Shown here in pieces: positions 36,144 through 62,524 of a DNA stretch of 64,000 nt (the first letter of the stretch is position 1; each line of letters begins with the position of its first letter). A program made the translations under genes and the position numbers. Source of the DNA: Macrostomum hystrix (lineage: Eukaryota > Animalia > Platyhelminthes). The stretch lies in NCBI GenBank assembly GCA_950097015.1, contig CATNEN010000025.1, positions 8,122,001-8,186,000 on the forward strand. Reading direction: 5' to 3'. The notes below the pieces were generated by a model. It ran no database searches and was not told the DNA's origin. It was given only the letters and a program-made list of their open reading frames with translations.

Positions 36144-36340
36144 CATTTGGTGATGCAGTAGATCCGCAGCCAGCCAGGAGGCAATTCTGCCCATTCCGCT
36201 GACTCCTGAGCACACACTCACACAGGTGTGTACATCTCATCGTCGGGCTGTGTACACTCTCACAGGGCCTTGGAGTTTGGCCCACAAGGGCATGAATTGC
36301 TCGACCTAAATGAACGTGGCCTCGCCGCGGAATCGAGCTG
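36144..36340 (-). mobile_element. SINE family A copy (truncated)
   Basis: GCAGCCAGCCAGGAGGCAATTCTGCCC...GTGGCCTCGCCGCGGAATCGAGCT. Confidence 0.78.
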
Positions 36341-37451: not shown

Positions 37452-40400
37452 GTAAGGCGACGATGGAGCTGCGATTCGAATGATTGTCAGCCGATTCAGT
37501 TGTCTTGGAAACCGTTGTCAAGCGGGTGGAATCTTGTCAGTAAAGTCAGTAGATACTTTTCTAGAAAAGCCAGGATCCGTATCCTCCAGTCCGCGGGCAA
37601 AATGCGGCCCTCGATGCTGCTGAAGTCAGCCTCCTACAACATCTATGAGCAATCATCCCATATCTGCCGTATCTCATCTCTCCTGTGTCTCATATCTGTT
37701 CCGTGTCTCATCTCTCCCCAGTCTCATCTCTCCTCTGTCTTATCTCTCCCGTGTCTCATCTCTCCCGTGTCTTATCTCTCCCGTGTCTTATCTCTCCTGT
37801 GTCTTATCTCTCCCGTGTCTTATCTCTCCCGTGTCTTATCTCTCCTGTGTCTTATCTCTCCCGTGTCTTATCTCTCCCGTGTCTTATCTCTCCCGTGTCT
37901 TATCTCTCCCGTGTCTTATTAATATGTCCTATTAAAATACGAAATAAACAAACGAGGCGCCGGACGAGGTGCCAAAGCCAATGAATGAGCGGGTTTCTTG
38001 AGGGTTTCTAGAGGGTTTCCTGAGGGTTTCATGAGGGTTTCTAGAGGGTTTCGAGAGGGTTTCTAGAGGGTTTCTAGAGGGTTTCGAGAGGGTTTCTAGA
38101 GGGTTTCTAGAGGGTTTCTAGAGGGTTTCTAGAGGGTTTCTAGAGGGTTTCTAGAGGGTTTCTAGAGGGTTTCTAGAGGGTTTCTAGAGGGTTTCTAGAG
38201 GGTTTCTTGAGGGTTTCTAGAAGGTTTCTTGAGGGTTTCATGAGGGTTCTTCAGGGTTTCTAGAGGGTTTCTAGAGGGTTTCTATAGGGTTTCTATAGGG
38301 TTTCTAGAGGGTTTCTAGAGGGTTTCTAGAGGGTTTCTAGAGGGTTTCTATAGGGTTTCTAGAGGGTTTCTAGAGGGTTTCGAGAGGGTTTCTAGAGGGT
38401 TTCTATAGGGTTTCGATAGGGTTTCTATAGGGTTTCGAGAGGGTTTCGAGAGGGTTTCTAGAGGGTTTCGAGAGGGTTTCTAGTGGGTTTCTAGAGGGTT
38501 TCTAGAGGGTTTCTAGAGGGTTTCTATAGGGTTTCGAGAGGGTTTCTATAGGGTTTCGAGAGGGTTTCTATAGGATTTCTAGAGGGTTTCGAGAAGGTTT
38601 CGAGAGGGTTTCTAGAGGGTTTCGAGAGGGTTTCTAGAGGGTTCAGGGCGCAACTGAAGCTTACTGATCGTTAGTCAATTTTCGTCGGCGAGTGTAGAAT
38701 TAAAAAATTCGCTGGGAAGATAGCTCAGACAGGGACGGAGTCCAGTCACGCAACGTCAGGTAACTCGTAGGTGGAAATTTCTGACTGCTCAGGGAGACTC
38801 AGCGCGTGACTAAATCAAAGGAAGGCCGACTCAAGACTGCAACCCGGTCACACACTAGCCTATGCCGGGATCTGGCTGAATTAATTTGTGAAATCGTTAA
38901 ATTTTTAATGCCTTCGGGTGCTTCCGGACAGTGTACAGATCTCTACAGAAATCTCTCCCGTGTCTCATCTCTCCCTAGTCTCATCTCTCTCGTGTCTTAT
39001 CTGTTCCGTTTCTCATCTCTTCCGTGTCTTATCTGTTCCGTGTCTCATCTCTCCCTAGTCTCATCTCTCTCGTGTCTCATCTCTCCCGTGTCTCATCTCT
39101 CCCGTGTCTCATCTCTCCCGTGTCTCATCTCTCCCGTGTCTCATCTCTCCCGTGTCTCATCTCTCCCGTGTCTCATCTCTCCTGTGTCTCATCTCTCCCG
39201 TGTCTCATCTCTCCCGTGTCTCATCTCTCCCGTGTCTCATCTCTCCCGTGTCTCATCTCTCCCGTGTCTCATCTCTCCCGTGTCTCATCTCTCCCGTGTC
39301 TCATCTCTCCCGTGTCTCATCTCTCCCGTGTCTCATCTCTCCCGTGTCTCATCTCTCCCGTGTCTCATCTCTCCCGTGTCTCATCTCTCCCGTGTCTCAT
39401 CTCTCCCGTGTCTCATCTCTCCCGTGTCTCATCTCTCCCGTGTCTCATCTCTCCCATGTCTCATCTCTCCCGTGTCTTATCTGTTCCGTGTCTGATCTCT
39501 CCCTAGTCTCATCTCCACCCAGTGAGTACTGTTTTTTTTGGCTTTCCTGTTAGGCCCGCGATGCAAATAGGGTGGCAACCCCTGTTTTAAAAAACATAAT
39601 TCTGTAGAATTGCTTAAACTGACCCTTGGCCATGACTATATTTGACGAACTGATAGGGCCGATTTTGATAGAAAATTGCTTACATTTATATTTATATCCA
39701 GAGCGGGCAAAAAAATGCGAAACACCGTTTCCTTTTCATGGATTTGAAATATCCCATTTCGGGATCTGAACGGGCAAAGAGGATCCAAGTCTAGGGAAGA
39801 AGATGACACATACCGTGCGTGTCGAATTTTCTTCCTTTCCCACTCGCAGCCGCCCCCACCTCCGCCGCCGAGTCCGCCTCATCTTGCAGTCACCGCGATT
39901 CGTTTTCCCCCTATCCCATTTTGTTTTAATACTAGTCGTCACGCGAATCGTCACGAAATAATCCCCAAAATCCCCTTTGTAGGATTCGGGCTCTGGTTGG
40001 GTCTGGCCAGTGCTTTGAGGGCGTGGCACTGCAGCTAATATTTTACATATTTTAAGTGTTAAGCTCAAATAATACAATTTGTAAGGGAGATTATAAGGGG
40101 TCAGTGGCAGAGCGGTCTAAACCATTTGCCTCTCGCACCAAGGTCCCTGAGTTCGATTCCGCGGCGAGTCCACATTAATTTCTGTCGCAGCCGCAGTGCG
40201 AAGACTTTGAGGAATTTTCGCCATTGATAGCCAACCTCCAAGGCACAGTGAGAGTGTACACTGCCTGACGATGAGAAAGTCAGGGCAGTTGTACACACCT
40301 GAGGGCTCAGGAGTCAGCGAAACGGGCTGAATTGCCTCCTTGCTTGCTGCGTGTCATCAAATAATGTGAGATTGGCAACTTCACAGCAAGCATCCCACTT

Positions 40401-44535: not shown

Positions 44536-47500
44536 ATTACAGATCCCCAGATTAAATCCCTAAGAGTATAGTTGGGGCTAACAATGCGCAGTCGATATGA
44601 TAAGCCGATTTCTTCGATTTTACCTATTCAATATGAATCTATTCGCTGAGCATAGAGACTGTATAGAGAATATTGAGGTGCGCAGCAGCAGCGGTGAGAA
44701 TTGGATGCTTGATTAAAACTGTGGGGGAAAACTAGGGATCACAGTTGGGAGAATGGGATAGGATCTGATGGATTGGGAATAATCAAGATGTGGCGAGAGA
44801 AACAGTAAGATCAGTGTCTTGATCGGTATCGAGTGACAAGTGAGAGGGATATTTTGGAAAAATTGAAGCCAGTCAGAGGGAGATTTCGGGAAAACTGAGG
44901 GGGAAGTCAGAGGGAGATTTCGGGAAAACTGACGGGAAGTCAGAGGGAGATTTCGGGAAAACTGACGGGGAAGTCAGAGGGAGATTTCGGGAAAACTGAA
45001 GGGGAAGTCAGAGGGAGATTTCGGGAAAACTGACGGGGAAGTCAGAGGAGATTTCGGGAAAACTGAAGGGGAAGTCAGAGGGAGATTTCGGGAAAACTGA
45101 GGGGGAAGTCAGAGGGAGATTTTGGGATAACTGACGGGGAAGTCAGAGGGAGATTTCGGGAAAACTGAGGGGGGAAGTCAGAGAGAGATTTCGGGTAAAC
45201 TGAGGGGGAAGTGAGAGGGAGATTTCGGGAAAACTGAGGGGGAAGTCAGAGGGAGATTTTGGGATAACTGACGGGGAAGTCAGAGGGAGATTTCGGGAAA
45301 ACTGAGGGGGGAAGTCAGAGAGAGATTTCGGGTAAACTGAGGGGGAAGTGAGAGGGAGATTTCGGGAAAACTGAGGGGGAAGTCAGAGGGAGATTTTGTG
45401 AAAAAAGCTGGAGTGACTCATGCAAAATTTGCATGCGCACCTGCATTGCATACTCAGACACAGGAAATGAATTTTTGAGACTAAAAAAAATTGAAGACCC
45501 CTCAAAAAATGTGATTTCAGTTTCTCACACCAAGGCCTCCAGCTGCCCCAGGTGGGCGAGGACTCGCGGGTGTACCAGGTGTGGCCGGAATTCAACGAGG
45601 CCGAAGTCAACAATGAGAAATGGGTGAGTTGGGCAACCGCATGATCAGGGGATGCCAATAATTAACTCCCTGGCTCGCACTAGGCAGGTGGGAACAAGGT
45701 GCGGCGTAGGCAGAGGAAGCCGGCTTGGGTGGGATTTTTCCCCCACTGGCGAGAGTCGGAATCCCAATTAATTTTTTTCCTCCCCTTCACTGGACTAATT
45801 GGCATCTGCGCTCTTTCTTCCTCTTCCTCCTTCTCCTAGTAGATTCGGTTCCAGTCTATTGGCGGCTTGGGGCACGACACAGACGTTGCGGTGGAAGATT
45901 CAGCAAGAAATAGAGAAAGTGATGAGTAGAAAGAAAGAAGCGGAAAAATTTGATTTGAGATCTCCCTCTGGGAGTTGGGAATTCTCAGCGACCAGATTTC
46001 TATTATTAGCATCTCCACCTAACCGGGGGATTCCAAATCCCATGTGTACAGGTGCAATCCCAATGATTTTGAGGATATTTAAGGATTTTTTATGAGCAGT
46101 TGCATACGGCTGTTCTGTCCACGGACTGGGGGACGCCACAAACCCTCAATTATCCCGTCAGAGCCAGCATCGTCGAGATATCCCCGGGGTATTTCTACTG
46201 TTAAACAGCTGGATAGAGTGAAGCGACGCACAGTTAAGTGTTTTGCTAATAGGATGCTGAGTCGGGATTCGAACTCCTGACCTTAATTTCAAGAATCCGT
46301 CTCTAGAACCAGAAACCCACCTAATGGAAAGAACCGAGTCTAAGTCAGTTTAGCTCAGGCTTTTAAGCTTAGAGAAAAGGTAGAGCAAGGACTGCTCACC
46401 TGGGTTGTGCCCATACGGTCTCAGCCAGGAACATGAGCCCCTCCCACCGGCCCAGCCAATCAGAGCCGAGCAGCTCAATTGCAAGCCGTTCTGGACCCGC
46501 ATCCAGTGTCTCACAATGTCCCGGCTGAGATAGCCTCATCCTCCGCTTCCAAGTTGCCGGCTCTGCTTCGAGAGAAAGGAAGAGAGAGAGAGAGAGAACT
46601 CGCTCTCACAAAGGTGGAAGAAGGATGGTGGACAGGGAAGGTAGAGGAGCAGACCCAAGCCGACGCCCTTGAGCACCCACCCCAACGCCGCCAAAATCCC
46701 CGCCCACCCCACCGGAGCACAGGTTGACGGATTGGGGTTGGCGCGAGCTGTGTCCCAATTAGAAAAAGGTATTTCACATTGTGCTCACCGAGGAACATTT
46801 TGCTAAGTCTGGAGGGCGGGGCTTCGGCCCCCCAGCACCATGTGAGCAGGGCAAAATCGATTTTATTTATTTTCATCCCAATTATCTAACTGAGGACTCA
46901 ACAATCGGGCATCAGCAACAGGGAGGCGGCAGATCAAAGGGCACCGATAAGGCGCCGAAGGGGACTGGAGGTGCGGCTGCTGCTGCTGCTGCTGCTGCTG
47001 CCGCGGTATGTATACAAATGCTTGATGCAAGAATAGTTACTGGTGCTGTGTTAGACACTCACTAGCTTGTGTTAGATACTCACTAGATTGTGTTAGACAC
47101 TCACTAGATTGTGTTAGACACTCACTAGATTGTGTTAGACACTCACTAGCTTGTGTTAGACACTCACTAGATTGTGTTAGATACTCACTAGATTGTGATA
47201 GACACTCACTAGCTTGTGTTAGACACTCACTAGGATGTCTTAGACACTCACTAGATTGTGTTAGATACTCATTAGGTTGTGTTAGACACTCACTAGATTG
47301 TGTTCTAATTAAGATTGTGTTAGACACTCATTAGGTTGTGTTAGACACTCACTATATTGTGTTAGACACTCACTATATTGTGTTAGACACTCACTATATT
47401 GTGTTAGACACTCACTAGGTTGTGTTAGACACTCACTAGGTTGTGTTAGACACTCACTAGGTTGTGTTAGACACTCACTAGATTGTGTTAGACACTCATT

Positions 47501-47805
47501 AGGTTGTGTTAGACACTCACTATATTGTGTTAGACACTCACTAGGTTGTGTTAGACACTCACTATATTGTGTTAGACACTCACTAGGTTGTGTTAGACAC
47601 TCACTATATTGTGTTAGACACTCACTAGGTTGTGTTAGACACTCACTAGATTGATTAGACGATGACCACGAAACATCATTGCCTGCAGGCAACTCAGCAG
47701 TACTTCGAAGATCCAGACGGTCCTCTGATGATGCCTCAAGCACTGAGGCCAACACGTTGGGTGCGACCGATGGAGTGGTGGCAGCAGCAGCAGCAACAAC
47801 AACAA

Positions 47806-47855
<50 letters not shown>

Positions 47856-47874
47856 GCAACAACAACAACAACAA

Positions 47875-47910
<36 letters not shown>

Positions 47911-48026
47911 CAGAAACAGCAACAGCAACAAAAGCAACAGCAGCAGCAGCTGCAACAGCCAGCAATAAATTCCCAGCAACAAAAACAGCAAGAGAAACAG
48001 TTGACCCAGCCTCAGAAGCAGCAATC

Positions 48027-48079
<53 letters not shown>

Positions 48080-51000
48080 TAGACGAGCCAGCTCCAGTGC
48101 CAACCGTCGTCGACGGTGAAAACGGTGGCTACTTCAGCTTCGATCTTATGTCCACAAATGAGCACATTTTGCATTGCGAGGTATGAACATATTTAAACAA
48201 AAATATTATTTGCTATACCTTTTTTCTGCGTAAGTTTTTGACTTCCCCAAAAATCACAATCATTTTCTTTTTATCCGTTATCTCTCACTCTCTTTATCGC
48301 TAACTTTGCATGTCACTCCATTTAAATTACCCCTACTATCTGTCACTATCTGTCACTCCTCTTATCTGTCACTCCTCATATCTGTCACTCCTCTTATCCG
48401 TCACTACTCATATCTGTCACTCCTCTTATCTGTCACTCCTCTTATCCGTCACTCCTCTTATCTGTCACTCTTATCTGTCACTCTTATCTGTCACTCCTCT
48501 TATCTGTCACTCCTCTTATCTGTCACTCCTCTTATCTGTCACTCCTCTTATCTGTCACTCCTCTTATCTGTCACTCTTATCTGTCACTCTTATCTGTCAC
48601 TCCTCTTATCTGTCACTCCTCTTATCTGTCACTCCTCTTATCTGTCACTCCTCTTATCTGTCACTCCTCTTATCTGTCACTCCTCTTATCTGTCACTCCT
48701 CTTATCTGTCACTCCTCTTATCTGTCACTCCTCTTATCTGTCACTCCTCTTATCTGTCACTCCTCTTATCTGTCACTCCTCTTATCTGTCACTCCTCTTA
48801 TCTGTCACTCCTCTTATCTGTCACTCTTATCTGTCACTCTTATCTGTCACTCCTCTTATCTGTCACTCCTCTTATCTGTCACTCCTCTTATCTGTCACTC
48901 CTCTTATCCGGCACTCCTCTTATCCGTCACTCCTCTTATCTGTCACTCCTCTTATCTGTCACTCTTATCTGTCACTCCTCTTATCGCTCACTCTTATCTG
49001 TCACTCCTCTTATCGCTCACTCTTATCTGTAAATTGTCTAGCCCGTTCTCTCATTTCGATAGTTTTAATTCTCGTTATCAATTCTCAATCCTTTCAATGT
49101 CACTCCGTACATACAGCTACTTAGGATTAGAATTTTGAAATGGCAGCATCCCCATGTGTGCTCAATTAGGAGAATTCTGTTCCGAGCACGATTCCATTAA
49201 AGGCAGCGAAAATAAAATGAAAATGAGGAAGAAATTTGCTTCGCAGCTTAAAGCGGGGAAGCTCACGAGATGCGGGGGATGAAAAAAATGGGAGAGAGGA
49301 AAAATATGTGAGTTCATGTGCCAAGCGGATTAGAGGAAGAACTTTCGTCGCTATTCCACCTGTCCCAGTCTAATCTATAGACCTGGCTGGCAGGGCTGAG
49401 ATAGCGACAGGGAGTCATGGATCAGGATTAGAAAGGCAAGGAGGAGATAATGATGGGGCAGCGAGAGGCTGGGCAAGCCTTTTGGGAAGCCCGCAGAGAA
49501 GAAGATTGAAGGGATTTGAATCAGTCAGTCAATCAGTCAGCCAGTAGGATTGCTCCCTCACCCTAGTCGTTATCCTGACCCTAGATCAACTCTCGCACAC
49601 GAAATGATGAAAGTATGGATTTATTACACATACATATATATATATAAATCGAAGACCCCCTGCATGCTCGCATTACCATTCAGAAACTAAAATAAATGAG
49701 AGTATGAGCTGGAGGTTAGAATTAAATAGAATACTATCGGGTGAGGACAAAAATAATTATCCTAGGTGGGTGTGAGCAGGGAATAATCCATCAGCTAAGG
49801 GATCAGAACTGACAGCCGCACTACTCAGCCCCGCAAACTGGTTTAACCGAAAAAAAATTTACTGAAGCAAATTAGACTAATCAAAATCCCATATTTCCAG
49901 TAAAACTCACCTGCTACACCGGCCCCAATACCCAATTTCAGCAGTCCTAGCTCAGTGGGCTGTCAGGGGCCATTTCCTGAGTCCATTATTAAATTGCCGC
50001 TGAGTCTCTCACCGGCCCGGGAAAAAGAAACAAAAAAATACTTCCTGTGGATTCTGGAGCAGAGATTTTTTTGCTGTGCGTGTCAAAAGCCCGGAAAAAA
50101 CGAAGCTTAGTTAGCGTCGGTCTGTCATTCCGCTTTCCCTCTAATTGGGATTCAAATTACTCAAGGGCCTCTCTTTTTATCTAAGGCGTCTAATTTTAAC
50201 ACCTTTGAGTGCCACCTTGCCTTGTCCTCCTATTTCTCTTTGATGCTTTCCTGTCTATTTTGTCGCGAGCGGCCTAAATAGCAAATCCAATGCAGATATA
50301 ATGACTCAGTAGGTTCATGCCTGCGTTTAACATTCAATATTGCTGAACAGCTACAAGAAAGGCAACTTAAAAAGAGGCTTAGAATAGTTATCAGATTTAA
50401 GCGCTTAAGCTTTTGCGTGGAGTAAGTGATTCTAAACACAGCAACGATATCGTTGACCAATCAGCTAACAACCGTTTAGCAAAAATTAGACCGGGTGACT
50501 CATAATAATCTATTCAATCCCAACATCGCTGGCCAATCAGCGCACAGAAAAGTTCTCAACAAGTTTCTATAAATAGATTCCGCAATAATAAATAAAGTGA
50601 CTCATTTTTCACCCACTCCAAACATTTGGCATCGCTGGCCAATCAGCGCGCAGCAAAGTTCTTAGCAAGTTTCTATAAATAGATTCTACAAAAATGAATC
50701 AAGTGAGTCACTTTTCATCCACTCCAACTCTTTAGCATCGCTGGCCAATTAGCGCACAGCAAAGTTCCAAAGAAGTTTCTGTAAATGGAAATCACAAAAA
50801 TGAATTAAGGAATCCAATTCACCCACCCAACCCCTTAAAAATCGTTGTCCCATCAGCGCGCCGGAAAATATCTTAAAAAGACCAACCTTTTAATCCCACA
50901 GCTGATCAGGTGGATTGTGACGCAAGTGGATGCACTTTTCCGACTTCACGCGGTGAAAGCTACGGGAAGCGAACCGTCAGAAGTTCTCGTCTCACCCGGC

Positions 51001-52644
51001 GGTCTGGTGTTCGGCTTCAGGCCCTGGGAGCACATCTACTCGGTTGGCAAGCTGGGAAAGGCGCCAAACATTCCACTGTACAATCCCTACGGGAAGTACA
51101 TTGTACGACTATTCTGGCTGGTGAGTTTGATGGGTTAAATTTTGGTCATCAACAAAGATCGCAAAATTGAAATGAACTGATTTGCAGGGCCAGTGGCGGA
51201 AGATCTACGTGGATGACAGTCTGCCGTTGGACGAGAACGACAAGTGCCTGCTGCCCATGACAACCCGGCCTTTGGAGCTGTGGCCAGCTCTCCTTAGCAA
51301 AGCTCTAATTAAAGTAGCAGCTCTAGAGTAAGCTCATTAATAAATTCCTACTGTTTCATCTTCAGTAGAGCTACTGATGAAAATATTGGCAAATAAATGA
51401 CTGGAATTTTCAATGGCCTCAAACAGCTATGGAGGCGGCAGCGGAACACAAGAGTTTGGCGACTTCAGCCCGATCCACTGCCTCACCGGCTGGCTGCCGC
51501 AAACCATTGCTGTCAGGTGATTTTTCCCCTGGGCGAAATTCACGATTGCTTTCAAACCGAATGACCGATTTTCATGAAAGTCCAGGTTGAATATTTTAGG
51601 AGTCTAATAAATAATGTGATTATTTGAAATGCCACGTAGTCTTTCTACCGTTAACGGATAATGCCCAACTTGAAGTAGTCAGGAAGTTAACAATAATGTT
51701 TTCAACACTCTTTAGAAAGGAGAGCTGCGAAAAATTGTGGCAGCTTCTGCAGAGAATTCTACCCAAGTGGAAGCCGCCAGAGATTAATAATAAAACTGCT
51801 GCGGAAGAGACAGTAAAACCTGACGGATTGGTAAGATTGCTGATTGATTAGAATTTAGATGGATTAATTTTCTACCCCAAACTTTCCTGTGATTGGCTGA
51901 GAAAATTCTTTCTCGTACTTCTACCCCGAACTTGCATCTCATTGGCCGAGAAAAGTCCTAATTACTTTTACCCCAAACTCGTCTCTGATTGGCTAATAAA
52001 ACTTTGCATCATTAACACTAAGTTTTTGCTTATTATTTATCACTTATTTGCGCCCCTACAGGCACAGGAACAGTCAGACAAGCTACATGCTTCAGACAGC
52101 AAACCATCGGTCAAGATAAGTTCTGACGGCAAAGCAAAAGGCAAATCAACTGCTTATTATAATATCAAATATGCATCATAATAGTAGAAACCAGTGTAAC
52201 AAATTTCTGATACATTTTTTATTAGGCAAGGAAGACAAGAAGCCGACTAGAAGTGAAAAAAATAGTAAGTGTAAATCTCTTCGATGCCCCTACTGATTAC
52301 CTCGATGACCTCCCAAATAACCAACTCTATGACCTCCCTAAATGACAAGCTATATGAATTCAAACCTCTCTGAACTTAACAATAATAATAATACTTTCTG
52401 GATGGCTGTGGACAATGGAGCATCATTTGGTGACACTAGACCCGCAGCCAGCGAGGAGGCAATTCTGCCCATTTCGCTGACTCCGCGGCTGCGACTTAAA
52501 TGAATGTGGCCTCGCCGCGGAATCGAGCTTAGGGACCTTTGGTGCGAGAGGCAAACGTGTTAGACCGCTCTGCCACTGACCACCCCTCACTATCTGACCT
52601 TTCTACTGAAAACGATCTTCAACTTTCTAGAAGAAGACCCATCT

Positions 52645-52681
<37 letters not shown>

Positions 52682-55600
52682 GTCCAGAAACTGTCGTATT
52701 CGCTTCTTTTTACGACGCTAGCCGACGCCAACCGCTCCTGCTGGCCTCCCTAGCCGACGGCGCCGACAAAAGCGAACGATTACGGCAGCACGGCCTGTCG
52801 TACCTGTTGAGCCACCCGGTGCTGCTCGCGCAGTGCCGGTCGCAGCCGCTGAAACCGTTGCCCGGCGCGCCTCCGCCGCCTCCGCCCTGGCAGTTGATCC
52901 GGCCGCGCCCCGGCAAGCAGAATTTGCCGACCAGTGAACCGACAGCTGTTGATGGTGGACACGATGGACCAGTGGAGGACGAGGAAGAGAACTCGAACTC
53001 GCCAATTCGAGCTGTGGAGATCGTGTCACCGTTCATTGGCTACAAGGTTGGTAAATTGAATCGCATTTCAAGTTATTCAACCGCCTTTGGATTTCTGTTA
53101 GATGTCTATGGGCTTAAACTATTGGATGAAAAAAGGATATTGAAGGAATGAAATCTCGACGAAGCAAGATTTTGAAGCAAAATGGGATTTCAACTCGATC
53201 TATGGAATTGCAGGAAAAATTCTCGACAAAATGGGATTTCGAAGATTATCGGAAGATTCGATACGAAAAAAAGGATTTTTACAGAAATTGATTTAAAAAA
53301 TTGATTTCGAAAAAATGTAAATTAGCTAAATGGGATTTTGCCAAACTGGGATTTCGACAAAATGGGATTTAGACAAAAGATATTTCGAAAAATGTGACTT
53401 CGGCAAAAGTGTATTTAAAACAATAGAGCTTTGAAAAAATGGGATTAAGAAAAATGATTTAAGAAGTAGTAACGATTTTCAAGTAGGGTAAAGTACGGTT
53501 TTAATGAATTTATCACTCAATTCGCGCATCTGACAGGTGAGCGCCGAACCTATGCCAAATCGTATAACTAGTCGTCCGGTGTCGTCGCTGAGTCGCCGAT
53601 CGACACGTCGTGAGTTGTCCAGTCGTCTGTACATCGGCGAGTCGGACTTCGAGACAACTGGCCAGCTTCCGCCGCCACCGCCGCCTCCGCCACCGCCGCC
53701 TCCGCCACCGCCGCAAGCTCAGCCCTCCGCCAGTGTAGAAAAATCTGTTGTAAGAGACACGAAAAAATTTTGATTTTAAAAAGAAAAAATCATTCAATGA
53801 GCATACTCACTCATCCATAAAAATGTCTGCAGACACTCCTGTTGCCGCAGCAGCAGCGAATTAGAAAGAATTCACGTGCGTCGGTAAGGCATTCCTTAAT
53901 GTTTACTGCTGCAAAATCATTTTCAATAATCCCAAGATTTGATAATACCAAGATTCGATTATCCAAAGATTCGATAATCTTAAGATTTGCTAATCCTAAG
54001 ATTCGATAATCCCAAGATTCGATAATCCCAAGATTCGATAATCCCAAGATTCGATAATCCCAAGATTCGATAATCCCAAGATTCGATAATCCCAAGATTA
54101 GATAATCCCAAGATTCGATAATCCCAAGACTCGATAATCCAAAGATTAGATAATCCCAAGATTCGATAATCCCAAGATTCGATAATCCCAAGATTCGATA
54201 ATCCCAAGATTCGATAATCCAAAGATTAGATAATCCCAAGATTCGACAGTCCAAAGATAAGATAATGCCTAGATTCGATAATCCCAAGATGCGATAATCC
54301 CAAGATTCGATAATCCCAAGATTCGATAATCCCAAGATTCGATGATCCCAAAGTATAATAGATGCTTAAAATCTAGATTCTATAGTGTCTAATTTTAGGA
54401 TCTCATTATCAAATTCCATGAATACAGAAGTTGCAACCCAAAAATCTGTGCCAGTTTTTCTTCCCAATAAACTGTTTTAGCCCAACGAAAAGGCCGCTGT
54501 GACTGGGTTGGCGACAAAGCCAGTGCCGAATGGCGGCAAATTGACGACTTCGGGTGGCCTTGAGTCGTCGAAACTCCATGCGGATTCGAAGGATCCTCTG
54601 GCTGAGGCGGCGGCTGCCTCTGCGGCTGCCTCTGCCGCTGCTGCTGCGGCTGAGGCCGAGCAAGAAAAGAAGAAAAAAAAATGGCTGACTATGGACGAAC
54701 TTTTGGAGTGCTTTCAGTGAGTTTATTGATTCAAAATCTGCCTTCATTAGTTGAATGACTATAAAACACTTTGAGTCTCAGGTTGCGAAATGAGACCCTG
54801 TGATTGGAATTGAGACCCTGTAATAATAATAATTAATAATTGCAGGAGGGCTGCGGGCAATGGCTTATCATTTGGTGACACTAGACCCGCAGCCAGCGAG
54901 GAGGCAATTCTGCCCATTTCGCTGACTCCTGAGCACACACGCACACAGATACTGTACGCAGGCACACGCTCACACAGGTGTGTACATCTGCCCTGACTTT
55001 CTCATCGTCAGGCAGTTACACTCTCACTGTGCCTTAGAGGTTGGCCCTCAACGGCGTAAATTGCACGACAAGCCCCCAAGCCTTCTCTCCGCGGCTGCGC
55101 CCCAAATAAATGTGGTCTCGCCTTGGAATCGAACTTAGGGACCTTGGTCGAGAGGTAAACACATTAAACCGCTCTGCCACTGACCCCTAATTGAAATTGG
55201 AGTTGAGACCGAGACCCTGAGATTTGATGTGAGACCCTGAGATTTGATGTGAGACCCTGAGATTTGATGTGAGACCCTGATATTTGATGTGAGACCCTGA
55301 GATTTGATGTGAGACCCTGAGATTTGATGTGAGACCCTGAGATTTGATGTGAGACCCTGAGATTTGATGTGAGACCCTGAGATTTGAATTGAGACCCAGA
55401 GATTTGATGTGAGACCCTGAGAGTAGATGTGAGACCCTGAGATTTGAATTGAGACCCTGAGATTTGAATTGAGACCCTGAGATTTGAATTGAGACCCAGA
55501 GATTTGATGTGAGACCCTGAGAGTAGATGTGTGACCCTGAGAGTAGATGTGTGACCCTGAGATTGATGCAAGACCCTGAGAGTAGATGTGTGACCCTGAG

Positions 55601-58600
55601 ATTTGAATTGAGATTCTAAGAATGAGGGAGATGAGAAGCTGAAGAGAAGCTGAGAAATTGAGACTCCAAGATTTTGTGATCTGATGGTATGAAACATTAG
55701 TTCTTGTTAGCATTGATTTATATTTATAAAGTTATCAGCAAAATAAAAAACATGTCATTCCTTCATTACAGCTGCATCCATGTCTATCACAAAGTGAGCA
55801 GTTATCAGTTCAAGCACACGTTCACCGATCTAAGAGTAAGCATCTACTAACTTCGCTTTTGGGAAAAATCACGGGTATTTAAATGTGAACCAAAATGGAT
55901 TAGCCATAGAGGTTCACACAGTGGCGGCGCAGCACCTCCAGCTGGGGGGCGGTGGTTGGGTGGTCACCCCCCCCGGCCACCAAAAAAAAAAGGTCTCAGG
56001 TGACCACCCCCATGCCCCATGGGGTGACCACACTTTTGAAAAAATATGGTAAAGTACCAATTTTTTTTAAGTGGGTGGTCACCCCCTGAGGGTGGTGAGG
56101 GTGGTCACCCGGGGGCAGCCCGCCCCCCCCCCCCCGCCCCCCCCCTGCGCCGCCACTGGGTTCACACATAGCAATGTTAGTTGCCCTTGTCACCAGGGTC
56201 TTTGACAAGAATCGCTGAGTATGTTAGAAATTTAGTTCATCATAATCATAAGCGGAAAATTTTGATCCAAATGATGGAACTTAACGAAAATCAGTCATTC
56301 GGTTCGGGAGCAAATCGTGAAGTAGGCAGTGGGTATTTGAAATACCCTGTGGTCTTTCCCCAGGGTAAAAAAGCGTGTTTAAGCATGTTTAACTGTAACC
56401 GATACCAACAGAGCATTGCGCCCTCGTCAGCAAAGGATGCCACACCAAGCAAAAAGGCAGTGGCCAGCGGCAGCGGCGGAGTTGTAAGTCAACGATTTAA
56501 AAAAATAATGACTAAAAATGGTTGAGGAGACACGAGTATAAAAATAATTGCAGTCACCAAACTTGCTGTGCTAATTAAAGTAGAAATATGAGAATGCGTA
56601 TGACTTAAATTAATAAAATGATCCTTTAGCAGGCGCACAGCGACCGGGATGATCGTAGCAGCACTCAAGGACCCATCTACCTGTTCGTAGACTCGCTAGC
56701 GCCAACTGAGATCATCCTGAGCATGTCTGTGCTCAGCCGATGGCCTGAGACCTACTCGGCAGTCAATGCTGCTAGTTCTTCTGCCAGAGTAGGCGGAACA
56801 TCAGTTGTCGCCGACGAGGCAATCAACTCGATGGTTGGGACTACAGCGAAGCCGAAGGATCAGCTGGTACCCGGAAGCTGCGTTGCTGGTACGAACCATA
56901 TAAATGTAATCGGATATTTCTATATTTCTGGTTCGATGTGAAATCAGATGGTTCTATGTGAAGTCAGATGGTTCGATGTAATTCATGTCTAAGCTTAGTT
57001 TCTTCTATTCTGCCTGCAGAGCAGCACAGCTGGAAGTCCTCCCGCCTCGGTCAACAGTTCAAGCGACTCCGCACAACGGGCACCAAGGCGATGTCACTTC
57101 AGCTGCCGGCCGGACGGCACACTCTGCGCCTGTCCGCCCGAGCTCCTGCCGCATTCGTCTGCTGCTTGGCTTCGGCCAGCGAATTCTTCGCCGGCACTGA
57201 GGAGGAAATTCTGCCGCTGTTGAAGTCGACCCCAGTGCGTCAGCAGCAATGGGCCACCAGTTTCAGTCGGGCTCTAGCTGAGCTAATCGACGTGTTTGAC
57301 AGCGAAGAGAAGATCGGCGTCAATCTGTCCAAGGCCGAAACGGCTCTGTGGCGTCTCCATGGAAACGACGCCAGCGTCGGACGTCCCAGAGAGCGTCGAC
57401 AACATCGAGAGAATTTCAGAGCTGTCATGTACGACCTGCTGGGCCGGGCGCTGGAAGGGGCGCCATTTGACGAGGCCGCTGAGTCCGTGCTGGCCTGGAG
57501 GTTGCTACTGTGCGACCCCGCGACACCCAATCCGCTGCACCTCGGGTTTCGACAGCTGAGGCCCGGGACGGCTCGGAGTGAGTGACGTCATTGACGCTAT
57601 TTGTTAATTAATAATTAATTGTACTCGTATAATAATTAATCAATGCAATATTAATAGCCGACATGGCTACATGGTGAAACTTTGTGAGCAGAAAAACGAA
57701 GCCTTTTTCGGTCTTTGAATCATAAAATAACTCGCCGATGCCTATGTTATTTGACACGGGAAGTTGTTTCATCGGCTTTTGCAGAAAATTTTAGCCTGGG
57801 TTCTGGGTTTTCCTGGCAATTGGTGAAATATTTTGGAATATTCGAGTAGAAAGAAAGAAAATGTGGGTATTTAAAATGGCCGCCATGGTTTTTTTACTGT
57901 CAAAAGAAAATTTATATACGAGTTCTACCAAAAATTGGCCAATTTCGAGTTCACAAAAGCACCTGCAATTTGCCTGGGCCGCGCAGAGTCGTCGGGTGTC
58001 CAGCTGGCGCAGCCGACGCCGCAGCCGACGCCGCATCCGACTGGTCGAGGCCGCGGGAAACAACAAGCCGCAGCCGCCGCAGCCGCCGCAGCCGCAGCAG
58101 CCGCAGCGGCCGCTCACGAAGCCGAGCACTCGCCTGAGCTGGACTTGCTTGAAAGTGCGTTTCGCTAAAAACAAAACTTTTTTCGAGCATCCCTCCCAAG
58201 ACAAGACTTGAACGCCTTGAAACTCAATATTCAAATTTCAACATCCGCAATCAGGGCTAGAGCGGGACCCGGACAGCTGGCTCAATCGAGCACCAACACC
58301 GGCGGACCATCTGGCAGCCGTTCGTCTGCAGCGGTGCTGGCGTGGTGCCCGAACTCGCCGGCTGTTGCGAGTCAGACAAGGCGGCGGCTCGCAGCCTGAG
58401 ACGCGCCGCGCCGTCGAACGACTGCGTCGCGCCTGGCGCCGAGTTGAATCGATTGGCGCCGAGGAGCTGAGCCTGCGCCTACTCCGCCAACTCATCGCCA
58501 TCCAGCCCGATGGGACACCGACGCTGCCGTTGCTGCCTCTGGCCCAGGACCAGGCCGGTCGAGCCGCTTATCGGGACTTTTTCGGCGCCTGCCCGGAGCA

Positions 58601-61600
58601 GGCGGCGGGCACCGGTCCCTACCCAGTGTTCCGCGAGATCCTTCGACCCAGCGCCGACTGCACCGTGCTGGTGCGGCTGACTAGCAGTCTACCCAGCTGC
58701 CACCTGCGCATTCTGGACAATGACAATGGCTATCGGGAGCTGGAGCGCGGTCTCGGCCACAGGATGCCGGCTCATCGACTTCGCGGCGGGGGCCGGCGCG
58801 GATACACTTTTCTGGCGTTGGCCACTGCGCCGGTGGACCGACCGGCACCGCCCGGACGGTGGCGCCTTCGACTGATTGGAGACGATACCGAGTCACTGCC
58901 GACACCTCTGCTGCACGGCAGAACGACCGATTTGAATGCAAACTTTTCCATTCGACAAGTGCAGGTTAGTTAGTTGTCGATGTACACTTGTACACTACCT
59001 AACGGGGGGTCGGTGGCAGAGCGGTTATCGCGTTTGCCTCTCGCATCACGGTCCCTAAGTTCGATTCCACGGTGAGGCCACATTTATTTGGGACGCTGCT
59101 GCGGAGAGAAGGCTTGAGGGCTTGTCGTGCAATTTATGCCCTTGAGGGCCAACCTCCAAGGCACAGTGAAATGTACACTGCCTGACGGTGAGAAAGTCAG
59201 GGCAAATGTACACACCTGTGTGAGCGTGTGCCTGCGTACAGTATCTGTGTGCGTGTGTGCTCAGGAGTCAGCGAAATGGGCAGAATTGCCTCCTCGCTGG
59301 CTGCGGGTCTAGTGTCACCAAATGATAAGCCATTGCCTGCAGCCCTCTAGCCATTATTATTATCATTTCCAGGGCTACTACGTCCCGGATCAGCAAGGCC
59401 GAGGCGTACTATTTCGTCAAAGCGTTCGAGTCACTGAGGATCACCTTGCCACAGTGCATCTTCGCCTCTCAAATCCGGGACTGATGGTGGCCCTGGAGAT
59501 TCTGGACAATGAACAGGTGGTCCTCGCTGTCGAGGGTCGAGGCCAGGCCCTTCTGCCGGCGTTTATCTTCGCCAGGGATAGCGGCGGACGGCGATTAGAC
59601 GGCGACGCGACAGAAGAACCGGTTTCAGCCACGTCTCCCAGCAGAAGCCCGTCCCGGAGTTCCGGTGGACCAACAGCGCGCAGTTCCAATGTAAGGGGCC
59701 ATGCACCTGGTCAGCGCGGACGCGGCGGCAGTAAGGAAGGAAAATTGTCGGTGAGTTCAAGTTTTTTTAATTAATGCCTGATAAAAAAATGCTTAATGTG
59801 CTCTAATATAACCTACTCCAGCTAATAAGCGAGGACTTTGAAATGTTCAGTCTGAAATAAATAAATTCCTGTCACCAGCCAGCCAATAAGCGAGGACTTT
59901 CTACTGCTTAGCTTTTAATCAATAAAATTTCTATCCTGAGCCAGCCAATAAGCGAGGACTTTCTACTGCTTAGCTTTTAATCAATAAAATTTCTATCCTG
60001 AGCTAGCCAATAAGCGAGGACGTTCTACTGCTTAGCTTTTAATCAATAAAATTTCTGTCCTGAGCTAGCCAATAAGCGAGGACTTTCTACTCCTTAGCTT
60101 TTAATCAATAAAACTTCTGTCCTGAGCCAACCAATAAGCGAGGACTTAAGACTGTTCCGATTTTTATCGATAAATTTATGTCCCCAGCCAGCCAATAAGC
60201 GAGGACTTAAACGTCCGATATTTATCGATAAATTCCTGTCCAGGTCTAGCCAATAAGCGGGGACTTCAGACTGTTCAGCTTTTAATCAATAAAACTTCTA
60301 TCCTGAGCCAACCAATAAGCGAGGACTTTGGCCTGTTCAGTCTTTAGGAGCTAATTCCTGTCCCCCATCAAGAAAACGACAAGGCAAAAAAAAAATTAAA
60401 ATAAAATTAAATTAAATTAATAAAAAATAGCGGCACTATTTTTATAGCACGCTAGCAGCGTCTCCAGCACGACACCGGATCTCATAGATTCCGATGGCGA
60501 GCCGCATAAGTACATCATCCAGGCCAGACTGCTGGATTCCGTTTGGCCCCTCACTGCGGATAACTGGGCTATTGTTCAACAGGTGCAGGAGCAGAACAAA
60601 GAGGACTTGAAGGGTAGGCATTCGGCATGGATATTTGACAGTTTTTAACATTCAAGAAGCAACTTGCATTTTTATCTCTCCCGTCAGTGTTCTCAAAGCC
60701 GAGAAGTGAGACACGGTTAGAAGATCAGCAGCAGCAGCAGCAGCTGCAGACAAAGACACTGGCCTCTCTAAGCGACGCGCCATCTGCTGCGGCAGCACCA
60801 AAGCGAGCAAGAGGCAGCCGGGCCGGAGGCGGACGTGCAGCTAGCGGAGCAGCCACTGCCGCTGCCACCGCCGCCGCAGACGCCGCCGCAGCCGCTGCAG
60901 CCGCGGCCGCCGCTGCGGCAGCTGCGTTCGACGATCGCAGGGCACACTGGGTGTTGCGTGTGGTGTCGGACGCTGCTCAGGGCGACGGTATCCAGGTCAA
61001 GCGCGACACCGAGGCGGCTGATCGGCTGCGAATGATGAAGCGCGCCTGGGAAGAAATGGAGCCTGGCCGGGCGGAGAAAGCTCGACAGAGTCGCTTGAGG
61101 TACTTAATTACTCATATTAGTGGTCTTTGTTTTATTGTAACGTCCGTTTATTGCCTTGAATATTTCGTACGTTTAGTTACGGTACAAAGACCACTCTTCT
61201 TTCCCTCCGGGGTAAGGTAAGGTAAAGTTGCTGAAACGGCCCTTTTTAGGCACACACGTAGCTTAAGTTTGGAACAAAAACAGAAACAGTTTCAGGGAGA
61301 TTCCTTGACCTGAACGTTGAAGTCTCATATATAATTCCCACAGATTCCTGAGCACCCACATGATAAAAAATCCCAATGCTGGCCAAGACAACCGCCAGCA
61401 GCAGCAGCTATCTGAGCTGCTCCTCGACCGTCCGCCGACGCCGCCGCCGCCCCAGGAGCTGCTCCGACCATTGGATATCGACGCGCTTCAACGAAAGGAG
61501 CCTGGCTCCGATGGCGCTTGCCGACGCAGCTTCGCCGACATTCAAGTCGAGGAGGACGCGGCTGCCGAGGAGCGGATGGCGCGCTTCGCCGACTTCCTGG

Positions 61601-62524
61601 CCGACTGGGAGCGCCGGATTGAAGCCGACAAGCGGGCTAGGAATGAGGAGAACAGGGCCTACCTGGGATTCGTGCAGGGACTCCAGGTGAGACAGAGAAA
61701 AAAATCCCCAATGTAATTTAGCCCCTTGTTACCTATCCCAATTCTCAGCAGGCCGAAATTTCCCAATACTTCGCTGATAATAATAATAATAATTGCAGGA
61801 GGGCTGCGGGCAATGGCACATCATCTGGTAACACTAGACCCGCAGCCAGTGAGGAGGCAATCCTGAGCAAACATGCACGCAAATACTGTACGCAGGCACA
61901 CGCTCACATTGTAGACCTACGATTCTACGAGCTTTCTCGTAACTTTCGCACCAAGGTCCCTGAGCTCAATTTCTCGGCGAGGGCGCAGCCGCGTGTAGAG
62001 AAGGCTTGGCGACCTTGTCGTGCAATTTACGCCCTTGAGGGCACAGTGAGAGTGCACACTGCCTGACGATAAGAAAGTCAAGGCAGGTGTACACACCTGT
62101 GTGAGCATGTGCCAGTGTGCGTGTTTGCTCAGCAGAAAGTAGAGTGAGCAGAATCGTCTCGTCGCTGGCTGCTGATCGGCACATAGCGCTAGCACTCACA
62201 GTCCCTGAAAGTTTTACATGAGTGCCAATTATAATTTATCCCTAAGTCCACACAAATCTCCACAAATGGCCGCAGAGGCGCACGGATGCCTACCGACAGG
62301 CCTACTTCCGGTCCCGCGAGTCCTACCGCCGCCGCTGCCTGCTTGCCGAACGCGAACGACAGCGCCTTCTGGCCGAAGCCGCAGAAGCCGAAGCGGCTGC
62401 AGCCGCCGCGGCTGCCGAAGCAGCCAAAGCCGAGAAGAAGCGGCTGCTGCGAGAGGCTAAGCGAGGAGCCGGCGGGAAACTGGCCAGACAGAGGTCGACT
62501 TCCGGTGGGAAAGCTCGGAAATAG
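36901..62524 (+). CDS. ADGB: Androglobin (calpain-like protease domain + circularly permuted globin split by an IQ motif + C-terminal coiled coil), 24 exons, about 2,059 aa
   Basis: Exons: 36901-37451, 45521-45623, 46895-47005, 47689-48180, 50902-51120, 51188-51327, 51427-51516, 51716-51830, 52062-52140, 52226-52264, 52631-53046, 53537-53749, 54481-54716, 55772-55835, 56412-56483, 56633-56888, 57020-57577, 57987-58154, 58255-58964, 59373-59750, 60448-60613, 60688-61099, 61344-61686, 62276-62524. Total 6180 nt, all phases compatible. ADGB-like motifs: VWPEFNEAEVNNEKWD, FEDPDG, PWEHIYS, YNPYGKYIVRLFWLGQWRKIYVDD, ELWPALLSKALIK, IHCLTGWLP, IQ motif AVRLQRCWRGARTRR, KRDTEAADRLRMMKRAWEEMEPGRAEKA. 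Confidence 0.93.
37660..39515. repeat. 16-bp repeat TCTCCCGTGTCTCATC in two parts (37660-37920, 38953-39515) separated by the left foldback arm
   Basis: Same unit on both sides of the arm. Confidence 0.92.
37990..38644. repeat. 12-bp repeat GGGTTTCTAGAG (left arm)
   Basis: Direct inspection. Confidence 0.95.
40097..40366 (+). mobile_element. SINE family A copy
   Basis: GGGGTCAGTGGCAGAGCGG head, GAGTTCGATTCC, shared body. Confidence 0.82.
41410..42520. repeat. Pyrimidine-rich 23-bp then 21/22-bp tandem repeats (CCCCATTCCCCATCCTTCAGTTA; CCCATCCTTCATTCACAGTTT)
   Basis: Direct inspection. Confidence 0.93.
42860..44040. repeat. 12-bp repeat CTCTAGAAACCC (right arm, inverted)
   Basis: Reverse complement of the left-arm array. 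Confidence 0.95.
44870..45398. repeat. About 31-34-bp G-rich tandem repeat GGGGGAAGTCAGAGGGAGATTTCGGGAAAACTGA
   Basis: Direct inspection; (GT)n microsatellite nearby at about 44500-44534. Confidence 0.92.
45521..45623 (+). CDS. ADGB: ADGB exon 2
   Basis: ATTTCAG acceptor; ...QVWPEFNEAEVNNEKW; GTGAGT donor. Confidence 0.88.
46895..47005 (+). CDS. ADGB: ADGB exon 3
   Basis: DSTIGHQQQGGGRSKGTDKAPKGTGG(A)n; GTATGT donor; weak acceptor (CTGAG). Confidence 0.7.
47047..47651. repeat. 21-bp tandem repeat TGTTAGACACTCACTAGATTG (ADGB intron 3)
   Basis: Direct inspection. Confidence 0.95.
47689..48180 (+). CDS. ADGB: ADGB exon 4 (start of calpain-like domain, with polyQ insertion)
   Basis: YFEDPDGPLMMPQALRPTRWVRP...FDLMSTNEHILHCE; CTGCAG acceptor; GTATGA donor. 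Confidence 0.9.
48330..49030. repeat. Variable tandem repeat CTTATCTGTCACTCCT (about 14-17 bp)
   Basis: Direct inspection. Confidence 0.95.
50490..50860. repeat. 106-bp tandem repeat (three copies plus a partial one) with TGACTCA, CCAAT and TATA-like motifs
   Basis: CATCGCTGGCC at 50524, 50630 and 50736. Confidence 0.88.
50902..51830 (+). CDS. ADGB: ADGB exons 5-8 (calpain-like core): 50902-51120, 51188-51327, 51427-51516, 51716-51830
   Basis: LIRWIVTQV, PWEHIYS, GKYIVRLFWL/GQWRKIYVDD, LWPALLSKALIK, EFGDFSPIHCLTGWLP, KLWQLLQRILP; canonical junctions. Confidence 0.93.
52062..53749 (+). CDS. ADGB: ADGB exons 9-12: 52062-52140, 52226-52264, 52631-53046, 53537-53749
   Basis: Phase-consistent chain; exon 11 has ETVVFASF, ERLRQHGLSYLLSHPVL, PPPWQLIRP, VEIVSPFIGYK; exon 9 needs a GC donor. 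Confidence 0.8.
52422..52585 (-). mobile_element. SINE family A copy with internal deletion
   Basis: 3' body joined directly to the tRNA-like head (...ACCGCTCTGCCACTGACC). Confidence 0.8.
53930..54352. repeat. 16-bp tandem repeat GATAATCCCAAGATTC
   Basis: Direct inspection. Confidence 0.95.
54481..56888 (+). CDS. ADGB: ADGB exons 13-16: 54481-54716, 55772-55835, 56412-56483, 56633-56888
   Basis: KWLTMDELLECF/HCIHVYHK..., PIYLFVDSLAPTEIILSMSVLSRW; canonical junctions, consistent phases. Confidence 0.85.
54820..55187 (-). mobile_element. tRNA-derived SINE family A, near full-length copy
   Basis: Head with A-box TGGCAGAGCGG and B-box GTTCGATTCC; conserved body GCAGAATTGCCTCCTCGCTGGCTGCGGGTCTAG; (ATT)n tail. 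Confidence 0.85.
55200..55615. repeat. 20-bp tandem repeat GAGACCCTGAGATTTGATGT
   Basis: Direct inspection. Confidence 0.95.
55919..56158 (+). mobile_element. Non-autonomous hAT-type MITE (240 bp) in ADGB intron 14
   Basis: 14-bp TIR CAGTGGCGGCGCAG / CTGCGCCGCCACTG; perfect 8-bp target-site duplication GGTTCACA (55911-55918, 56159-56166); internal GGTGGTCACCC repeats. Confidence 0.9.
57020..58964 (+). CDS. ADGB: ADGB exons 17-19 (C2-like segment, permuted globin, IQ motif): 57020-57577, 57987-58154, 58255-58964
   Basis: LPAGRHTLRL; helical globin-like segment FSRALAELIDVF...; IQ motif LQRCWRGARTRR; YPVFREIL; GYTFLA; GRWRLRLIG. The exon 18 acceptor is weak. Confidence 0.88.
59004..59364 (+). 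mobile_element. tRNA-derived SINE family A, near full-length copy
   Basis: GGGGGTCGGTGGCAGAGCGGTT head; GTTCGATTCC B-box; same body; ATTATTATT tail. Confidence 0.85.
59373..62524 (+). CDS. ADGB: ADGB exons 20-24: 59373-59750, 60448-60613, 60688-61099, 61344-61686, 62276-62524 (TAG stop)
   Basis: GYYVPDQ..LFRQSVRV, EGRGQALLPAF, HKYIIQA..WPLT, HWVLRVVSD, KRAWEEMEPGRAEKA; basic C-terminus. Confidence 0.88.
59815..60362. repeat. About 62-bp tandem repeat (nine copies) with conserved core AGCCAATAAGCGAGGACTT
   Basis: Direct inspection; ADGB intron 20. Confidence 0.92.
61776..62172. mobile_element. Two divergently oriented SINE family A fragments (minus about 61776-61908; plus about 61946-62172)
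   Basis: (TAA)n TTGCAGGAGGGCTGCGGGCAATGGC...; then TCGCACCAAGGTCCCTGAGCTC...TCGCTGGCTGC. Confidence 0.75.

What the first reader, a model, noticed from the sequence alone, without database searches (positions are those of the whole stretch)
57241..57360. Androglobin globin domain appears to have lost both heme-ligand residues
Seen: exon 17 encodes VRQQQWATSFSRALAELIDVFDSEEKIGVNLSKAETALWRLHG. Recalled from the literature and not verified here: human ADGB has a distal Gln (E7) and a proximal His (F8) 32 residues apart, in ...EQSLLIMKAIGNVIANF...LQTAHYP. A gapless alignment puts Trp (57250-57252) at E7 and Leu (57346-57348) at F8, with a His four residues downstream (57358-57360). Inference: this ADGB may not bind heme, or may use a shifted ligand. 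That would separate its ciliary role from heme chemistry.
Basis: partly seen in the sequence, partly recalled or inferred. Interest (0 to 1): 0.75.

Follow-up and report, generated by a model that had tools for sequence, protein, structure and literature searches.

The report
Flatworm androglobin: distal Trp, proximal His probably kept
This is an expressed androglobin gene of a macrostomid flatworm in which tryptophan replaces the usual distal glutamine, while the proximal histidine is probably still present, displaced four residues by a small insertion; such changes are common in this protein family, so the finding is largely ordinary.

Summary
The peptide and coordinates are correct. The exon (57020-57577, + strand) belongs to a spliced, transcribed androglobin (ADGB) gene. 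Its closest relatives are Macrostomum lignano gene models.

E7 is Trp (57250-57252). That stretch aligns without gaps, is anchored on both sides, and M. lignano also has Trp there.

The claimed loss of F8 depends on where a 5-residue length difference between helices E and G is placed:
- HMMER and HH-suite profile alignments place a 4-residue insertion in the EF corner and put His 57358-57360 on F8.
- The 12 columns before F8, scored without the His, favour that register by 7.5 bits (P about 0.016 after allowing nine registers).
- That register gives the canonical Leu-x-x-x-His pattern, with Gly ending the helix.
- AlphaFold2 of the half domain could not decide.

Other globin determinants and the IQ motif are kept: A12 Trp, B9/B10 Leu, C2 Pro, CD1 Phe. 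M. lignano has Leu at the His position.

F8 His is missing in many other ADGBs (teleosts, a shark, a finch, a rotifer). Loss of both E7 and F8 is already published for hexapods.

Verdict: E7 change confirmed, F8 loss probably an alignment artefact here (about 65%), low novelty.

The parts
51188..51328 (+). Part of the calpain-like protease domain of the same gene
   Evidence: Pfam Peptidase_C2, E 2.3e-6, 27.3 bits against a cutoff of 23.8. tblastn of Patella, Babylonia and Glandiceps ADGB maps here.
57020..57577 (+). Exon encoding the end of Androglobin domain II and globin helices E to H
   Evidence: Pfam Androglobin_II at residues 2-63 of the exon, E 2.6e-16. Exon borders come from spliced transcript contigs of runs X1, X3 and X4. 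The family profile of this part hits cytoglobin and other globins in the PDB.
57250..57252 (+). Trp at globin position E7 (Gln in most ADGBs)
   Evidence: Gapless alignment, same column in MAFFT, hmmalign and hhalign. M. lignano also has Trp.
57262..57264 (+). Phe at E11 (Ile/Val/Leu/Met in other ADGBs)
   Evidence: Same gapless E-helix alignment. M. lignano also has Phe.
57313..57330 (+). Approximate site of a 4-residue insertion in the EF corner or start of helix F
   Evidence: hmmalign inserts IGVN and hhalign inserts VNLS. The E-to-G spacing is 35 residues against 30 in most ADGBs.
57346..57348 (+). Leu: F8 by gapless/MAFFT alignment, F4 by profile alignment
57358..57360 (+). His (CAT): probable proximal F8 histidine
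   Evidence: hmmalign posterior about 0.9. hhalign gives the same register. Register score is +6.5 against -2.8 bits. Without the His column it is +6.74 against -0.78 bits, shuffle P 0.002, or 0.016 for the best of nine registers. The transcript contig of run X1 is identical to the exon.
57403..57405 (+). Second His, just before helix G, conserved in most ADGBs (role unknown)
   Evidence: The column holds His in most representatives, more often than the F8 column does.
57987..58154 (+). Small exon encoding a low-complexity (Pro/Gln, poly-Ala) linker between helix H and the IQ motif
   Evidence: Present in the spliced transcript contigs. The six joined exons give an open frame of 746 codons. 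M. lignano model P0005 carries the same HEAEHS motif.
58255..58961 (+). Exon encoding the IQ motif, globin helices A to C, and Androglobin domain IV
   Evidence: Transcript contigs. Pfam Androglobin_IV E 2.3e-18 and a weak IQ hit. hmmalign to the family A-C profile has high posteriors.
58326..58361 (+). IQ calmodulin-binding motif (LQRCWRGARTRR)
   Evidence: Read directly from the sequence, it fits [ILV]QxxxRGxxxR. The Pfam IQ hit is 13.8 bits, below the 20.3 cutoff. It aligns with the IQ motif of other ADGBs.
58578..58580 (+). Phe at CD1 (Tyr in about 82% of ADGBs, Phe in most others, per PMC11077535)
   Evidence: hmmalign of the A-C part puts RDF on ADY.

Best explanation
The exon is part of an intact, transcribed androglobin (ADGB) orthologue of a macrostomid flatworm. 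The gene has a calpain-like domain, Androglobin domains II, IV and V, and a circularly permuted globin domain (helices E-H, linker, IQ motif, helices A-C). Trp occupies distal position E7 and Phe occupies E11, which gives a bulky, apolar distal pocket. M. lignano shares both residues. The proximal histidine is most probably kept. A 4-residue insertion, about one helical turn, at the EF corner moves it four residues down the sequence. A gapless alignment therefore puts Leu (really F4) on F8 and leaves the true F8 His (57358-57360) apparently 'downstream'. Inferred, not shown: the domain still binds heme through this His, with hindered or altered distal ligand chemistry, and calmodulin still binds the IQ motif.
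For: Gene identity:
- Pfam Androglobin_II, IV and V and Peptidase_C2.
- 60 ADGB relatives, the closest from M. lignano.

Expression and splicing:
- Transcript contigs from two studies join exons 56630-56888, 57020-57577, 57987-58154, 58255-58961, 59370-59749 and 60447-60612, mostly with no mismatches (0 in X1, 1-2 in exon 57020-57577 of X3 and X4).
- The joined exons give an open frame of 746 codons.

Family E7 and F8 columns:
- The ADGB profile aligns to cytoglobin 6q6p (E 5.7e-4), with consensus Gln on E7 His and consensus His on F8 His.

E7 Trp:
- The alignment is gapless in every method.

F8 His:
- hmmalign to a profile built without Macrostomum gives a posterior of about 0.9.
- hhalign of a Macrostomum profile, in which two of three rows have Leu there, gives the same register.
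- The register score is +6.5 against -2.8 bits.
- The 12 preceding columns alone score +6.74 against -0.78 bits. This is the best of 15 registers, with shuffle P 0.002, or 0.016 for the best of nine.
- The register matches the conserved Ala at -8 and Leu at -4 (Glu at -7 also matches, but adds only 0.4 bits), and Gly follows the His as a helix cap.

Other determinants kept:
- A12 Trp, B9/B10 Leu-Leu, C2 Pro, CD1 Phe and the IQ motif.
Against: - MAFFT, with one gap instead of two, puts Leu on F8.
- M. lignano has Leu at the position of the His in both of its gene variants. The His is therefore not conserved within the genus and could be a chance residue.
- The Fasciola ADGB has no recognisable F8 motif. 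Loss may therefore be old in flatworms.
- The closest non-Macrostomum hit, P0004, has a 5-residue longer FG loop. If WIN shared that insertion, the Leu register would fit.
- AlphaFold2 of the half domain ends helix F two residues after the Leu and two before the His. It was also fed the MAFFT register, so it decides nothing.
- Trp E7 plus Phe E11 could fill the pocket instead of heme.
- No heme-binding data exist.
Confidence: 0.6

Rival explanations
1. Both heme ligands are gone (E7 Trp, F8 Leu), the downstream His is a chance residue, and the permuted globin domain is a heme-free structural or calmodulin-binding scaffold, as proposed for hexapod ADGBs.
For: - MAFFT and gapless alignments put Leu on F8.
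- M. lignano has Leu at both candidate positions and Trp at E7.
- The bulky E7 Trp and E11 Phe could fill the pocket.
- The F8 His is absent in many ADGBs: Lota, Lampris, Cyprinodon, Paramormyrops, Pristiophorus, Lonchura and Rotaria. It is also absent in all hexapods (PMC7457136). Heme is therefore dispensable for whatever is conserved.
- The globin part is 47% identical to M. lignano, against 72-78% for domain II.
Against: - Profile alignments and the His-independent register score favour the His register.
- The other heme-pocket determinants (CD1 Phe, F4 Leu, B10 Leu, C2 Pro) are kept.
Confidence: 0.3
2. Heme is bound through another histidine, such as the widely conserved His just before helix G (57403-57405), so the canonical F8 position is irrelevant.
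For: That His column is conserved in more ADGB representatives than the F8 column, including several that lack the F8 His.
Against: - In ADGBs with a canonical F8 His it coexists with that His about 14 residues later, at the FG/G boundary. This position is more consistent with a propionate contact than with iron ligation (inference from globin structure knowledge).
- One M. lignano variant has Leu there.
- No experimental support.
Confidence: 0.05
3. The copy is a decaying pseudogene, so the residue changes are meaningless.
For: Fast divergence of the globin part. Repeats and minisatellites crowd the introns.
Against: - Correctly spliced transcripts in two studies.
- An open frame of 746 codons over six exons.
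- All flanking ADGB domains pass Pfam thresholds.
Confidence: 0.03

Closest known systems
Vertebrate androglobin (human ADGB: distal Gln792, proximal His824, CD1 Tyr976; PMC9249397, PMC11077535)
   Same: Same architecture: calpain-like domain, domains II/IV/V, and a permuted globin with helices E-H, IQ motif, then helices A-C. The probable F8 His, F4 Leu and IQ consensus are also shared.
   Different: E7 is Trp instead of Gln. E11 is Phe. CD1 is Phe instead of Tyr. There is a 4-residue insertion before helix F, E7-F8 spacing of 36 instead of 32, an extra poly-Ala linker exon, and no Cys at the E2 position of the proposed disulfide.
Hexapod androglobins with degenerate globin domains (Prothmann et al. 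2020, PMC7457136)
   Same: The distal E7 Gln/His is missing. They show that ADGB persists without canonical heme ligands.
   Different: Hexapod proteins lack both E7 and F8 and are not recognised as globins by domain searches. Here the E-H part still aligns over its full length with the ADGB family profile, which itself retrieves globins from the PDB. A His also fits F8.
Macrostomum lignano ADGB gene models (UniRef A0A1I8FAX4, A0A1I8FFU8, A0A1I8FJD0 and others)
   Same: Closest relatives (46-78% identity). They share E7 Trp, E11 Phe, the ALW motif in helix F and the linker exon.
   Different: M. lignano has Leu where this genome has the candidate F8 His. The M. lignano models are fragmentary and fused to unrelated genes.

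Membership tests
Androglobin (ADGB) | N-terminal calpain-like cysteine protease domain | tested here: met
   Pfam Peptidase_C2 at 51188-51328, 27.3 bits against a cutoff of 23.8. tblastn of full-length ADGBs maps to 50884-51517.
Androglobin (ADGB) | Androglobin-specific domains II, IV and V in order | tested here: met
   PF22068 E 2.6e-16, PF22069 E 1.6e-18, PF22070 E 6.3e-12 in successive exons.
Androglobin (ADGB) | Circularly permuted globin domain: helices E-H, then IQ motif, then helices A-C | tested here: met
   The order is seen in the spliced product. The family profile of the E-H part hits PDB globins. The A-C part aligns with high posterior.
Androglobin (ADGB) | IQ calmodulin-binding motif inside the globin domain | tested here: met
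   LQRCWRGARTRR at 58326-58361 fits the consensus. The Pfam IQ hit is only 13.8 bits, below cutoff.
Heme-binding globin | Proximal His at F8 | tested here: inconclusive
   Profile methods put His 57358-57360 on F8. MAFFT puts Leu there. AlphaFold2 did not decide.
Heme-binding globin | Distal His or Gln at E7 | tested here: not met
   Trp at 57250-57252 in every alignment. E7 is variable among ADGBs (Asn, Ser, His, Thr, Lys, Leu, Val) and is not needed for heme binding as such.
Heme-binding globin | Aromatic residue at CD1 | tested here: met
   Phe at 58578-58580 on the CD1 column as defined in PMC11077535.
Heme-binding globin | Actual heme binding (Soret spectrum) | not testable with these tools
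   Needs recombinant protein.

The most novel reading that the evidence does not exclude
Within one flatworm genus the proximal histidine of androglobin is kept in this species and replaced by Leu in M. lignano, while both share a Trp at E7. That would be a natural pair of heme-capable and heme-free ADGBs in a clade with a transgenic model. It would let one test directly whether ADGB's ciliary or sperm role needs heme.
Probability: 0.3. Interest if true: 0.4.

Novelty: new member of a known kind. Interest (0 to 1): 0.2.

Why it matters
Androglobin's function in cilia and sperm is poorly understood, and whether it needs heme is open. This gene adds little to that question. Ligand-less ADGBs are already described for hexapods, and my alignment shows the F8 His missing in teleosts, a shark, a finch and a rotifer. 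The useful points are methodological and local. A gapless alignment mis-assigns F8 here because of a one-turn insertion. Macrostomid flatworms also carry an unusual Trp E7 / Phe E11 distal pocket, and their proximal His seems to differ between species.

Tried and rejected
- **Word search with the exon**: found nothing because of the length filter. A second word search with M. lignano P0002, region 579-720, returned only M. lignano models, so no other macrostomid orthologues were available.
- **My first gene model:** it used an acceptor at 58318 and no linker exon. The transcript contigs showed it was wrong, so I corrected it.
- **AlphaFold2 of the E-H half domain and of the Patella equivalent:** both gave good helices. 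The helix-F end falls midway between the two registers, and the input alignment carried the MAFFT register, so they are not decisive.
- **Structure searches with the half-domain model:** Foldseek against the PDB and VIA-align wide returned only generic helical hairpins or bundles. They are uninformative because half a globin does not fold like a globin on its own.
- **Full permuted domain:** it could not be folded. The spliced sequence has no reference, and I did not paste long sequences.
- **PDB sequence search with the exon alone**: no ADGB structure found.
- **Hoogewijs 2012** is not held in the library.
- **ARAGORN on the intronic repeat** found no tRNA.
- **Pseudogene reading:** rejected on transcript and open-frame evidence.
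- **Human sequences:** no human contig was met or used. Human residue numbers are from papers only.

Full report
**Observation**

The window encodes the quoted peptide on the + strand in the frame of 57022.

The exon runs from 57020 to 57577, with a GTGAGT donor at 57578. Pfam places the end of Androglobin domain II at residues 2-63 of the exon. Domains IV and V lie in the next large exons. A calpain (Peptidase_C2) hit lies upstream at 51188-51328. The gene is therefore an androglobin on the + strand. I could not verify the label 'exon 17'.

**Organism and expression**

- A full HMMER scan with the exon found 60 ADGB relatives.
- The closest are fragmentary Macrostomum lignano gene models, 46-78% identical. 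Molluscs, a hemichordate, tunicates and vertebrates follow.
- The genome is therefore a macrostomid flatworm other than M. lignano.
- Contigs of public runs from two studies are spliced. They join 56630-56888, 57020-57577, 57987-58154, 58255-58961, 59370-59749 and 60447-60612, mostly without mismatches.
- The six exons give an open frame of 746 codons.
- This corrected my first model and revealed a 56-codon poly-Ala/Pro-Gln linker exon between helix H and the IQ motif.
- The gene is expressed and intact over this span.

**What the family columns are**

A profile of the E-H part of 25 ADGBs retrieves canonical globins from the PDB. Cytoglobin 6q6p scores E 5.7e-4. The alignment puts the consensus Gln on the E7 His and the consensus His of the A-H-C-P motif on the F8 His. 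This agrees with the published human assignments, Gln792 and His824 (PMC9249397, PMC11077535).

**E7**

From the GDEE motif through helix E the alignment has no gaps in MAFFT, hmmalign or hhalign.

- The window has Trp on E7 and Phe on E11, and M. lignano has the same.
- Three Gln residues precede the Trp, at E4-E6.
- E7 is variable in ADGBs: Asn in molluscs, His in Glandiceps and Fasciola, and Ser, Thr, Lys, Leu or Val elsewhere.

**F8**

The stretch between the end of helix E and the start of helix G is 35 residues here and in M. lignano, against 30 in most ADGBs.

The evidence for the other register is as follows:
- hmmalign to a profile built without any Macrostomum sequence inserts four residues (IGVN) in the EF corner and one in the FG loop. 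It puts the His of LWRLH on F8 with posterior about 0.9.
- hhalign of a Macrostomum profile, in which two of three rows carry Leu at that place, gives the same register against the family.
- Scoring fixed registers against the profile gives +6.5 bits for the His register and -2.8 for the Leu register.
- With the F8 column and all later columns left out, the 12 preceding columns score +6.74 against -0.78. This is the best of 15 registers tried.
- Shuffles of the local residues reach this score in 0.2% of cases at one register, and in 1.6% when the best of nine registers is taken.
- The His register matches the conserved Ala at -8 and Leu at -4 (globin F4). Glu at -7 also matches, but adds only 0.4 bits. 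Gly follows directly as a helix cap, where other ADGBs have Cys-Pro.

AlphaFold2 of the half domain (pLDDT 84.7) ends helix F at residue 59 of the segment, two after the Leu and two before the His. In the Patella control the helix ends on the F8 His. The input alignment carried the MAFFT register, so this is not independent and decides nothing. Structure searches with the half-domain model were uninformative.

**The rest of the domain**

The A-C part aligns with high posteriors:
- A12 Trp, B9/B10 Leu-Leu and C2 Pro are kept.
- Phe sits on the CD1 column. That column is Tyr in about 82% of ADGBs and Phe in most of the others (PMC11077535).
- The IQ motif LQRCWRGARTRR fits the consensus, though the Pfam IQ score is below cutoff.

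**Against the main reading**

- M. lignano has Leu where this genome has the candidate F8 His, in both of its gene variants.
- The Fasciola ADGB has a roughly 70-residue insertion and no A-H-C-P motif.
- The nearest non-Macrostomum hit, P0004 (an unnamed Logan contig), has a clear S-H-C-P-P motif with an FG loop five residues longer. An FG insertion is therefore possible in related lineages.
- I put about 65% on the His being the homologue of F8, and about 50% on the domain binding heme.

**Context and novelty**

- Among cluster representatives the F8 His is replaced in Lota (Cys), Lampris (Tyr), Cyprinodon (Leu), Paramormyrops (Cys), Pristiophorus, Lonchura (Tyr), Rotaria (Tyr) and several unnamed fragments.
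- Prothmann et al. 2020 report that all hexapod ADGBs lack both E7 and F8 (PMC7457136).
- I found no paper on flatworm ADGB.

**Mechanism, with shown and inferred steps marked**

Shown:
- ADGB identity and transcription.
- The permuted domain order.
- Trp at E7.
- A His that fits F8 in profile alignments.

Inferred:
- The domain binds heme through that His.
- The Trp/Phe distal pocket hinders or alters ligand binding.
- Calmodulin binds the IQ motif.

No human contig was met or used. Long sequences were passed by reference only, which is why the spliced full domain was not folded.

Noticed in passing
window 58990-59345; copies at 54848-55187, 40097-40355, 52404-52586, 31021-31243, 33662-33775, 35498-35607, 36143-36305, 61801-62172: An interspersed repeat of about 340 bp lies in ADGB introns and elsewhere in the window, at 80-93% identity. 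Contig depth there is hundreds to thousands of times that of the exons in the RNA-derived runs. ARAGORN finds no tRNA in it, although part looks tRNA-like by eye.
   Followed up: partly
window 57403-57405: A His just before helix G (consensus x-x-H-F-x-V-F-N) is conserved in more ADGB representatives than the F8 His itself, including several that lack F8. Its role is unknown to me. It may be a heme-propionate contact or a non-heme function.
   Followed up: partly
window 57987-58154: A 56-codon exon encodes a Pro/Gln-rich and 16-residue poly-Ala linker between globin helix H and the IQ motif. It is present in transcripts and shared in part with M. lignano P0005.
   Followed up: partly
window 47037-49124, 53811-54335, 55135-55713: Long minisatellite arrays in introns give spurious repetitive ORFs on both strands (for example SECLTQ repeats and WDYRILGLSNLGIIES repeats).
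   Followed up: no
P0014, P0045, P0049, P0056 (teleosts), P0054 (sawshark), P0050 (finch), P0039 (rotifer): The F8 His of ADGB is replaced in many vertebrate and invertebrate lineages. E7 Gln is kept in the teleosts and the finch (the sawshark has Lys, the rotifer Arg). I did not find this pattern discussed in the papers read.
   Followed up: partly
P0089 (Fasciola hepatica androglobin), residues about 890-960: Trematode ADGB has His at E7, and a roughly 70-residue insertion replaces the EF/F region. No A-H-C-P motif is recognisable.
   Followed up: partly
window 60687-60950: A poly-Gln/poly-Ala coding stretch in a downstream ADGB exon gives many conflicting contig joints and very high summed depth in the runs. 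This is probably low-complexity cross-mapping.
   Followed up: no
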